In this document: piece by piece, positions 32,751 through 32,830 of the stretch
How the letters are laid out: each line of letters opens with the position of its first letter
Numbering within the stretch: position 1 is the first letter of the stretch
Source of the DNA: Octopus sinensis
Taxonomy: Eukaryota
Length of the DNA: 48,022 nt
Assembly: GCF_006345805.1 (NCBI RefSeq)
Contig: NW_021834422.1
Span: 1-48,022, forward strand
Direction of reading: 5' to 3'
The notes under the pieces: generated by a model
Database searches by the model: none
What the model saw: the letters and a program-made list of their open reading frames with translations, nothing else
What the model was told of the DNA's origin: nothing
Position numbers and translations under genes: made by a program

Positions 32751-32830
32751 CTTCGACATATGTTTCAAAGACAACATGGTTTTATTCCAAAGGAATAAAC
32801 AGTGTAAGAGGCAATCTTCTCATCAGGAAA
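32751..32830 (-). ncRNA. Type I hammerhead ribozyme (Penelope-associated), apparently intact
   Basis: Minus strand: UUUC-CUGAUGA-GAAGA[43 nt]UCUUU-GAAA-CAUAUG-UC|GAAG. Stems I and II pair, stem III is palindromic, cleavage triplet GUC. Confidence 0.75.

What the first reader, a model, noticed from the sequence alone, without database searches (positions are those of the whole stretch)
32751..32830. Apparently intact hammerhead ribozyme in sense orientation inside the putative Nav2 intron, 3' of a Penelope ORF
Seen: on the minus strand all catalytic core bases are present (CUGAUGA at 32826-32820, GAAA at 32766-32763, GUC with predicted cleavage between 32755 and 32754). Stem I is UUUC/GAAG, stem II is GAAGA/UCUUU with a 43-nt loop containing its own UUUAUUCC/GGAAUAAA hairpin, and stem III is the palindrome CAUAUG. 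It lies about 290 nt past the Penelope ORF end, on the same strand. Established: Penelope-like elements carry hammerheads in their pseudo-LTRs, and palindromic stem III forms work best as dimers. Inference: it would be transcribed within the channel pre-mRNA and could cut it co-transcriptionally, affecting processing of a very long intron. Unlike the Penelope ORF, the core shows no obvious decay.
Basis: partly seen in the sequence, partly recalled or inferred. Interest (0 to 1): 0.75.

Follow-up and report, generated by a model that had tools for sequence, protein, structure and literature searches.

The report
Decayed retrotransposon hammerhead ribozyme relic
The hammerhead motif is real, but it is the ordinary 3'-end ribozyme of an old, broken Penelope-like retrotransposon copy in an octopus genome, and its helices have decayed, so it is unlikely to cut any host transcript.

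Summary
My strict descriptor finds this one site in the window and none in 300 dinucleotide shuffles.

It is not a free-standing ribozyme. It lies 289 nt past the stop codon of a dead retroelement ORF, which is 5'-truncated, frameshifted, split by a SINE and swollen by microsatellite. It lies about 55-60 nt before the element ends in (TA)n. The protein motifs, and a predicted fold closest to telomerase RT, place the element in the 'Hydra' clade of Penelope-like elements, where hammerheads are universal.

Two Octopus sinensis paralogs carry the same motif. So do 53 of 85 non-octopus relative loci, almost always on the ORF strand, with strong covariation.

'Intact' holds only for the 13 core bases. 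Against a three-copy octopus consensus, the window copy differs at 19 of 96 positions. Helix II falls from 12 perfect pairs to 9, three of them G·U, and G10.1-C11.1 becomes G·U. The predicted occupancy of the ribozyme fold falls from about 0.8 to between 1e-3 and 1e-9.

Helix III is a zero-loop palindrome that needs a second copy, and the 48 kb holds none. I found no sodium-channel exon, so 'sense in a Nav2 intron' is unverified. Cleavage of a host pre-mRNA is unlikely. Low interest.

The parts
32740..32842 (-). Hammerhead ribozyme motif, type I (open helix I), from distal helix I to distal helix I. Core CUGAUGA at 32826-32820, GAAA at 32766-32763, palindromic box ACAUAUGU at 32763-32756, C17 at 32755, predicted cleavage 32755/32754.
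   Evidence: Direct reading. Descriptor scan gives 1 hit against 0 in 300 shuffles. Homologous motifs in Octopus sinensis at L002 7536-7608 and L003 8171-8244.
32767..32819 (-). Helix II element of 53 nt. The outer stem keeps 9 of the consensus 12 pairs (3 of them G·U, plus 3 mismatches) and encloses the inner hairpin UUUAUUCC-UUU-GGAAUAAA. This long helix II is specific to the octopus family.
   Evidence: Three-copy alignment A4 and its consensus. In 48 distinct hammerheads of non-octopus relatives the helix II element is 11-25 nt. The inner hairpin shows one C-G to A-U compensatory change in L003.
32690..32739 (-). 3' tail of the element, from the cleavage site to its end in a short (TA)n.
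   Evidence: Homology with L002 and L003 runs to about 32695 and stops at TATATA in all copies (A1; A4).
32843..33114 (-). 3' untranslated stretch between the ORF stop codon and the hammerhead.
   Evidence: Frame analysis. Partial homology to the L002 3' UTR.
33115..34172 (-). Remnant of the C-terminal half of the ORF: the IWFVIPF linker region, an Asn-rich microsatellite expansion (about 33530-33800), a GIY-YIG-like endonuclease (FYIGASTS...STGLSKLVW), and a frameshift at about 33255-33265 before the CNICNSE...KCKH tail. Stop codon at 33117-33115.
   Evidence: Translation. tblastn of relatives. Alignment with relatives. Octopus sinensis homologs P0001 and P0002.
34173..34382 (-). SINE-like repeat inserted into the ORF.
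   Evidence: It interrupts the homology to P0002. The same repeat occurs elsewhere in the window (D13; repeated peptide motifs).
34383..34800 (-). Remnant of the C-terminal part of the reverse transcriptase (MGLHIVFDDEL..FLDITLNL..YHKPST..SNH), matching residues ~373-500 of ~710-aa relatives. The element is 5'-truncated here.
   Evidence: tblastn gives E 1e-13 to 3e-19. No further PLE coding remnant exists anywhere in the window.
34844..34885 (.). (TA)n microsatellite next to the 5' truncation point.
   Evidence: the repeat finder families D3, D5 and D6. Hydra-clade PLEs insert into (TA)n (PMC8557442).

Best explanation
This is the pseudo-LTR hammerhead of one old, dead, 5'-truncated copy of a Hydra-clade Penelope-like retrotransposon in an octopus genome.

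In live elements of this clade a type-I hammerhead sits 120-600 nt past the RT-endonuclease ORF and a few dozen nt before the 3' end. Elements insert in partial tandems, so the motif flanks the ORF on both sides. Its helix III is a loop-less palindrome. Two copies on one long transcript (or two RNAs) must therefore pair through it to form active ribozymes that cut unit-length RNA out of the tandem transcript. The literature reports that this is slow and probably assisted by protein or chaperones.

The window copy kept the 13 core bases by chance survival. It lost helix stability, and it has no partner copy and no cognate protein. The most likely outcome is that it does nothing to any RNA that contains it.

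Shown here: the motif, its homology, its clade, its position in the element, the covariation across the clade, and the helix changes in this copy.
Inferred: the dimer mechanism (from the literature and the palindrome) and present-day inactivity (from thermodynamic prediction and the literature).
For: Motif and chance.

Same motif at the same place in paralogs: L002 and L003.

Element identity:
- A 20-protein alignment of relatives shows RMRWKAFF, ADKT, GLYRDDGL, IIWFNPPY, CNCR..CPL.G.C, C.LC..EK and SKCRH. These match the published Hydra-clade description: RWK, DKT, no CCHH, CxCX5C, CxxC/CxH, (TA)n insertion and universal hammerheads (PMC8557442).
- An AlphaFold model of relative P0080 (pLDDT 89.9) has telomerase RT as its best PDB matches (3du5, E 1.4e-8), followed by other RTs.

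Clade-wide hammerheads:
- Descriptor hits lie on the ORF strand in 55 of 87 loci and on the other strand in 3.
- Fourteen loci carry one at both ends.
- Covariance model R1 finds 64.
- 91% of cells are paired against 58% in shuffles and 32-53% in slid controls, and 10 of 11 pairs show compensatory changes.

Decay of this copy:
- It differs from the 3-copy consensus at 19 of 96 positions, with none in the core. Helix II has 9 of 12 pairs against 12 of 12.
- The HHR fold is the MFE for the consensus (-36.6 kcal/mol, P 0.80). For the window copy P is 9e-4 in that context and 2e-3 to 2e-9 across eight flank lengths, against 0.1-0.4 for L002 at short flanks.
- The folding z-score is -0.95.

Dead ORF. 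No second copy.

Literature: a single PLE hammerhead showed no detectable cleavage and dimers cleaved weakly (PMC4209133). The Anolis PLE hammerhead cleaved only with its protein, and no RNA-seq ends mapped to the site (PMC11167929).
Against: - The catalytic core is complete in all three octopus copies despite 20-25% divergence. Part of that divergence therefore arose in master elements under selection, and some 'window-specific' changes could be subfamily features rather than decay.
- One window change in helix II is fully compensatory (G-C to A-U) and three give G·U.
- G·U at 10.1-11.1 occurs in 6 of 48 scored relatives, so it is not disqualifying.
- A consensus of three copies is crude.
- Nearest-neighbour thermodynamics ignores tertiary contacts, co-transcriptional folding and chaperones.
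- No experiment was possible.
Confidence: 0.85

Rival explanations
1. The lone copy still self-cleaves in vivo. It is transcribed inside a long host intron and nicks the pre-mRNA co-transcriptionally, perhaps helped by chaperones or by pairing in trans with other copies of the family.
For: The core is complete, stems I and II can be drawn, and H17 is C. G·U at 10.1-11.1 is seen in some relatives. Intronic hammerheads that are thought to act on pre-mRNA exist in amniotes (PMC6155905).
Against: Helix III cannot close in cis, and no partner lies within 48 kb. The HHR fold is predicted at 1e-3 to 1e-9 occupancy. Single PLE hammerheads are inactive in vitro and dimers are weak. One needs its own protein, and this family's ORFs are broken in every copy seen. 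The host gene and strand are unverified. Retrozyme hammerheads are reported as excluded from introns (bioRxiv 10.64898/2026.07.22.740005).
Confidence: 0.07
2. The motif has been domesticated as a conserved intronic regulatory ribozyme, like HH9/HH10 in amniote introns.
For: Only the survival of the core in a decayed element.
Against: The domesticated intronic hammerheads described in the literature are monomeric with a closed helix III and are ultraconserved (PMC6155905, for the conservation; the closed helix III is from my own knowledge). Here helix III is a zero-loop palindrome and the helices carry uncompensated mismatches (U·U, C·U, C·C). Survival of the core is expected by chance in about 7% of copies at this divergence. 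Rfam HH9/HH10 give no match.
Confidence: 0.03
3. It is a chance match to the hammerhead consensus in AT-rich DNA.
For: Rfam reports nothing. My clade-level covariance model does not reach it either. The folding energy is no better than shuffles.
Against: There were 0 descriptor hits in 300 shuffles. The same motif lies at the same position in two paralogous elements, with all core bases kept. It sits where hammerheads lie in 53 related loci. The models also miss the paralogs L002 and L003, whose long helix II explains the miss.
Confidence: 0.01
4. It is part of a retrozyme, a non-autonomous tandem hammerhead repeat that makes circular RNA.
For: Animal retrozymes derive from PLE pseudo-LTRs (bioRxiv 10.64898/2026.07.22.740005).
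Against: There is no tandem repeat of the unit. It is a single copy directly continuous with an ORF remnant.
Confidence: 0.01

Closest known systems
Hammerhead ribozymes of Penelope-like element pseudo-LTRs (Cervera & de la Pena 2014, PMC4209133; Lunse, Weinberg & Breaker, RNA Biol, cited in PMC6765202)
   Same: Type I topology and a full catalytic core. A helix III reduced to a palindrome that can pair only between two copies. A position in the repeat downstream of the RT-EN ORF on the same strand. High sequence variability between copies.
   Different: The helix II element is 53-55 nt in the octopus family (a 12-bp stem in the consensus plus an inner hairpin). It is 11-25 nt in the 48 relatives sampled here, and about 6 bp in the published minimal motifs. 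There is no bulged nucleotide between A9 and 10.1. This copy has G·U at 10.1-11.1.
Hydra clade of C-terminal-endonuclease PLEs (Craig, Yushenova, Rodriguez & Arkhipova 2021, PMC8557442)
   Same: DKT and RWK motifs (in relatives, and DKT in the O. sinensis full-length copy), GLYRDDGL, and a GIY-YIG without the CCHH finger. CxxC and CxH lie around the conserved E/N. The elements are short, insert into (TA)n, and carry canonical hammerheads. Molluscs are listed among the hosts.
   Different: All three octopus copies lack the four cysteines of the CxCX5C linker (NPNR..LSNNSKI instead) and carry an Asn-rich expansion. I could not check whether an octopus family is in that paper's supplementary list, because the supplements are not held.
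Intronic hammerheads HH9/HH10 of amniotes (de la Pena & Garcia-Robles 2010, as summarised in PMC6155905)
   Same: A type I hammerhead thought to derive from retroelements, possibly lying in an intron.
   Different: Those are ultraconserved at orthologous loci (PMC6155905) and, from my own knowledge, monomeric with a closed helix III. This one has no closable helix III, has degraded helices, is not matched by the Rfam HH9/HH10 models, and has no evidence of orthologous conservation.

Membership tests
Hammerhead ribozyme | Catalytic core C3 U4 G5 A6 N7 G8 A9 ... G12 A13 A14 A15.1 ... U16.1 H17 (H not G) | tested here: met
   CUGAUGA, GAAA and U-C are all present in order. The core is identical in the paralogs except for the free position N7 and the allowed H17.
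Hammerhead ribozyme | Helices I and II flank the core in the right topology | tested here: met
   Helix I is 4 bp, a 1x2 loop and 5 bp. Helix II is 6 contiguous pairs, or 9 of 12. Across the clade, 91% of cells are paired and 10 of 11 pairs show compensatory changes.
Hammerhead ribozyme | G10.1-C11.1 pair | tested here: not met
   The window has G·U, L002 has G-C and L003 has G·G. Among relatives the counts are G-C 24, G·U 6, A-U 3 and other 15, so the feature is common but not obligatory.
Hammerhead ribozyme | Closed helix III allowing monomeric folding | tested here: not met
   ACAUAUGU is a loop-less palindrome, so only an intermolecular or tandem duplex is possible. This is typical of metazoan PLE hammerheads.
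Hammerhead ribozyme | Match to curated covariance models (Rfam Hammerhead_1, _3, _II, HH9, HH10) | tested here: not met
   No hit at gathering score or at E<=10. The same models miss the hammerheads of the five related loci scanned (L002, L005-L008), so the test is uninformative.
Hammerhead ribozyme | The ribozyme fold is thermodynamically accessible | tested here: not met
   ddG is 4-12 kcal/mol against the ensemble at eight flank lengths. P is 9e-4 against 0.80 for the 3-copy consensus. The z-score is -0.95.
Hammerhead ribozyme | Mg-dependent self-cleavage at H17 | not testable with these tools
   This needs an in vitro transcription and cleavage assay.
Penelope-like element, Hydra clade | Telomerase-like RT with DKT and RWK motifs, no CxC, no IFD | tested here: inconclusive
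   The window copy keeps only the C-terminal part of the RT. The O. sinensis copy L003 has DKT and YRDD. Relatives show RMRWK, ADKT and GLYRDDGL. The model of relative P0080 matches TERT best. Pfam RVT_1 does not hit, and a PDB sequence search gives nothing.
Penelope-like element, Hydra clade | C-terminal GIY-YIG endonuclease without the CCHH finger, with CxxC and CxH near the conserved E and N | tested here: met
   The window has FYIGASTS...STGLSKLVW...(frameshift)...CNICNSE...KCKH. Pfam GIY-YIG is weak: E 8e-4 in P0080 and 0.08 in L003.
Penelope-like element, Hydra clade | CxCX5C linker upstream of the endonuclease | tested here: not met
   All three octopus copies have NPNR..LS(N/S)NSKI where relatives have CNCR..CP..G.C.
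Penelope-like element, Hydra clade | Hammerhead in the repeat flanking the ORF, on the same strand | tested here: met
   The window core starts 289 nt past the stop codon. The same holds for L002, L003 and L005-L008, and for 55 of 87 loci overall. Fourteen loci have one at both ends.
Penelope-like element, Hydra clade | Insertion into (TA)n | tested here: met
   The 3' ends of the window, L002 and L003 copies stop in TATATA. A (TA)n lies at the 5' truncation point, 34844-34885.
Penelope-like element, Hydra clade | Pseudo-LTRs (partial tandem) around the ORF | tested here: not met
   The window copy is 5'-truncated with a single 3' repeat.
Domesticated intronic hammerhead (HH9/HH10 type) | Sense orientation inside an intron of a defined host gene | tested here: inconclusive
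   No exon of a voltage-gated channel was found by a motif scan, tblastn (best E 1.4) or Pfam on 150 ORFs. The host gene and strand are unknown.
Domesticated intronic hammerhead (HH9/HH10 type) | Conservation at the orthologous locus across species | not testable with these tools
   No cephalopod genome collection can be searched by DNA here.
Non-LTR retrozyme | Tandem array of hammerhead-bearing units | tested here: not met
   It is a single copy with no tandem unit.

The most novel reading that the evidence does not exclude
The octopus lineage of Hydra-clade PLEs carries a long-helix-II hammerhead variant. It has a 53-55-nt helix II element and a 12-bp stem plus a conserved inner hairpin in the consensus, and it escapes both Rfam and a clade-level covariance model. 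Scattered lone copies such as this one might keep enough chaperone-assisted or trans-dimer activity to nick very long neural pre-mRNAs.
Probability: 0.04. Interest if true: 0.55.

Novelty: new member of a known kind. Interest (0 to 1): 0.18.

Why it matters
It matters little for biology. Hammerheads are a universal, massively copied part of Penelope-like elements, and a lone decayed copy is the expected debris.

Three points are modestly useful:
1. Rfam's hammerhead models miss this whole class, so motif-plus-context reading or a purpose-built model is needed to annotate them.
2. The octopus family shows an unusually long helix II and has lost the zinc-knuckle cysteines of the endonuclease linker. 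This is a small addition to the description of the Hydra clade.
3. An intact 13-nt core in an old repeat is not evidence of function.

Tried and rejected
- Rfam at gathering score and at E<=10, and on relatives. There was no hammerhead hit anywhere, so I dropped it as a test.
- Pfam on the window ORFs and on full-length relatives. No RT domain was found and GIY-YIG was only weak. I used motifs and a predicted structure instead.
- PDB sequence search with the family profile. Nothing was found.
- The closest protein relative, P0003 (Logan contig L004). The contig ends before any hammerhead.
- Covariance model R1, built from 19 non-octopus hammerheads. It does not reach the reported site or the two octopus paralogs at the thresholds used. 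The likely cause is the long helix II, so this does not count against the site.
- Search for the claimed host gene: an S4 and pore-motif regex, tblastn with Nav transmembrane domains written from memory, and a Pfam scan of 150 non-repeat ORFs of at least 36 aa. No channel exon was found. I ran no further search on retrieving an octopus channel gene, because the gene would probably exceed the size for which DNA is returned and the answer would not change the verdict.
- Looking for a partner copy in the window. There is none on the minus strand.
- Supplementary tables of Craig et al. 2021, to see whether an octopus Hydra family is already listed. They are not held.

Full report
OBSERVATION

On the minus strand the sequence reads ccuuu-c-uuuc CUGAUGA gaagau(41 nt)gucuuu GAAA cauaug UC^gaag-uu-aaagg.
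- CUGAUGA at 32826-32820
- GAAA at 32766-32763
- C17 at 32755

Stem I is UUUC/GAAG. After a 1x2 internal loop it can continue as CCUUU/AAAGG. Stem II is GAAGA(U)/(G)UCUUU around a long loop with its own hairpin, UUUAUUCC/GGAAUAAA. The box A-CAUAUG-U is a perfect palindrome with no loop.

My descriptor asks for the core, stem I of at least 4 bp, stem II of at least 4 bp and a palindromic or hairpin helix III. It finds this one site in the window and none in 300 dinucleotide-preserving shuffles.

Rfam reports no hammerhead at its gathering scores or at E<=10 on a 601-nt slice. The same models also miss the hammerheads of the five related loci scanned (L002, L005-L008), so that negative carries no weight.

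WHAT IT BELONGS TO

Upstream on the same strand lies the wreck of a retroelement ORF:
- An RT C-terminal piece at about 34800-34383.
- A SINE-like insertion at 34382-34173.
- The linker region, an Asn-rich microsatellite expansion and a GIY-YIG-like endonuclease down to 33115, with a frameshift near 33260.

It matches residues ~373 to the end of ~710-aa relatives, and nothing else in the window encodes such a protein. The copy is therefore 5'-truncated and dead.

A protein search with the window's endonuclease part found only two Octopus sinensis proteins, whose loci I fetched. One of them (L003) has a 667-aa ORF with DKT, FDIASFYPSV, MGSSDS and YRDD motifs. Searching with that ORF found 602 relatives. 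Most are ~700-aa proteins on ~2.5-kb contigs from metagenome and sequencing-run assemblies.

Their alignment shows RMRWKAFF, ADKT, GLYRDDGL, FLDVTLNL, IIWFNPPY, CNCR..CPL.G.C, Y.GLTE..FK.RY.NH..SF, C.LC..EK and SKCRH. These are the features published for the 'Hydra' clade of Penelope-like elements: RWK, DKT, no CCHH finger, a CxCX5C linker, CxxC and CxH around the conserved E/N, short elements, (TA)n insertion and canonical hammerheads throughout (PMC8557442).

Pfam does not see an RT in any of them, and a PDB sequence search is empty. However, an AlphaFold model of relative P0080 (pLDDT 89.9, pTM 0.85) has telomerase RT as its best PDB matches (3du5, E 1.4e-8). Other reverse transcriptases follow, which fits a PLE. 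'Penelope ORF' is therefore right at the class level, and the clade is Hydra.

THE MOTIF IS HOMOLOGOUS, NOT CHANCE

Both O. sinensis paralogs carry the same hammerhead at the same place, at L002 7536-7608 and L003 8171-8244. All three copies:
- keep the whole core (N7 varies and H17 is C, C or A, both allowed);
- share the long helix II element of 53-55 nt with an inner hairpin, which shows one C-G to A-U compensatory change;
- share a palindromic box, ACAUAUGU or ACAUGUGU;
- end about 55-60 nt later in TATATA.

I fetched 80 metagenomic loci of relatives in addition to five fetched earlier. Descriptor hits lie on the ORF strand in 55 of 87 loci and on the other strand in 3. Fourteen loci have one at both ends, as pseudo-LTRs.

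Covariance model R1, built from 19 of these, finds 64 instances. On that alignment 91% of cells are paired. The figure is 58% in shuffles and 32-53% when partners are slid, and 10 of 11 pairs show compensatory changes. That alignment is fitted to the model, which flatters the numbers somewhat.

In the 48 distinct relatives the helix II element is 11-25 nt and the helix III box is 9-10 nt and almost always palindromic. The octopus family is thus a long-helix-II variant. This is the likely reason R1 misses the window site and both octopus paralogs at the thresholds used.

IS IT 'INTACT'?

Only in the core. The majority consensus of the three octopus copies has a perfect 12-bp helix II with G10.1-C11.1. 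It folds into the hammerhead as its minimum-energy structure (-36.6 kcal/mol, occupancy of stems I+II 0.80).

The window copy differs from that consensus at 19 of 96 positions, none of them in the core. Its helix II has 9 of 12 pairs: three are G·U and there are U·U, C·U and C·C mismatches. C11.1, which sits in a CpG in L002, is U.

The predicted occupancy of the ribozyme stems is:
- 9e-4 in the same context as the consensus;
- 2e-3 to 2e-9 across eight flank lengths, against 0.1-0.4 for the L002 paralog at short flanks.

The MFE is a different fold, and the folding energy is ordinary (z = -0.95).

At about 20% divergence, 12 required bases escape change in about 7% of copies (0.8^12). A surviving core therefore needs no selection.

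Caveats:
- Three copies make a crude consensus.
- Some window-specific changes may be subfamily features. One is fully compensatory.
- G·U at 10.1-11.1 occurs in 6 of 48 scored relatives.
- Nearest-neighbour energies ignore tertiary contacts and chaperones.

HOW IT WORKS AND WHY IT PROBABLY DOES NOTHING HERE

In live PLEs the hammerhead lies in the repeats that flank tandemly inserted copies. Helix III cannot close, so two motifs must pair through the palindrome. Cleavage would then release unit RNAs from the long transcript (PMC4209133, PMC6765202).

Published activity is poor:
- A single motif gave no detectable cleavage, and dimers or trimers gave little.
- The Anolis PLE hammerhead cut only when its own protein was added, was dispensable for insertion in vitro, and left no RNA-seq ends (PMC11167929).

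The window has no second copy on the minus strand. The family's ORFs are broken in every copy seen, and the helices are weakened. Co-transcriptional cutting of a host pre-mRNA is therefore unlikely.

THE HOST-GENE CLAIM

I could not confirm a Nav2 intron. No S4 or pore motif appears in any frame. tblastn with sodium-channel transmembrane domains written from memory gives a best E of 1.4. Pfam on the 150 longest non-repeat ORFs shows no ion-channel family. The window looks like repeat-rich non-coding DNA. Its gene and transcribed strand remain unknown.

VERDICT

The motif is real and accurately described. It is the ordinary pseudo-LTR hammerhead of a dead Hydra-clade PLE copy, intact in its core and degraded in its helices, and it is not a plausible regulator of a host transcript. 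It is a new member of a known kind, and interest is low.

Noticed in passing
window 31551-31611 (+): A second hammerhead relic lies on the opposite strand, 1.15 kb away: GUGC CUGAUGA auaugu(11)acauau GAAA cuauuag UA gccc. The clade-level covariance model R1 scores it 22.4 bits (E 5e-4), the best hit in the window. Stem I is reduced to 2 contiguous pairs, and no PLE coding remnant or homologous locus accompanies it. It abuts an (ACAT)n/(CA)n microsatellite. It is probably a solo 3' fragment of another Hydra-type family.
   Followed up: partly
window 33440-33500 (-); L002 about 6620-6680; L003 about 7130-7190: All three octopus copies have NPNR..LS(N/S)NSKI where relatives have the nearly invariant CNCR..CP..G.C zinc knuckle. 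All four cysteines are gone. Because the change is shared, it is a family trait rather than decay of one copy.
   Followed up: partly
window 33530-33800 (-): An Asn-rich low-complexity expansion (AAT-type microsatellite) lies inside the PLE ORF, between the linker and the endonuclease. It is also present, with different length, in L002 and L003.
   Followed up: no
window 32299-32492 and 37233-37442 (+): Two copies of a SINE-like repeat in direct orientation (up to 91% identical over 82 nt), 4950 bp apart, bracket the PLE remnant. Further fragments lie at 35439-35522 and 35536-35619, and a different SINE-like repeat sits inside the ORF (34173-34382).
   Followed up: no
window 34964-35290 (+): An ORF ends ...YPERLTSLGMDTLKLRRLAADLADTHKI.... 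From memory it resembles the C-terminal tail of a CR1/RTE-type LINE ORF2. It lies just beyond the PLE's 5' truncation point. Pfam gave no hit.
   Followed up: no
window 29900-30460 and 35870-36430: Two long, imperfect (CAT)n-type trinucleotide arrays are related to each other (61-81% over 300 nt). They give spurious His-, Asp- and Met-rich ORFs of 150-245 aa.
   Followed up: no
window 38906-39026 / 39033-39153: A 121-nt inverted repeat, 95% complementary with a 6-nt spacer, forms a long perfect-hairpin structure (possibly MITE-like).
   Followed up: no
window 32500-32562: The weak Rfam 'miRNA' hits here (mir-3149, mir-297, mir-1277; 22-28 bits against gathering scores of 81-100) fall on the (TA)n/(CA)n microsatellite and are low-complexity artefacts.
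   Followed up: yes
L009-L088 (metagenome loci): Hydra-clade PLE relatives are abundant in the metagenome contig collection, with 401 confirmed stretches in one scan. Many contigs are only ~2.3-2.9 kb and carry the same hammerhead at both ends, which suggests tandem or terminally redundant assembly of whole elements. Their eukaryotic hosts are unknown.
   Followed up: partly
L003 4757-4798 (-) vs 8269-8310 (+): A 42-nt perfect inverted copy of the element's 3' tail lies just upstream of the full-length O. sinensis copy. This matches the inverted 5'-truncated partner often described next to PLE insertions.
   Followed up: no
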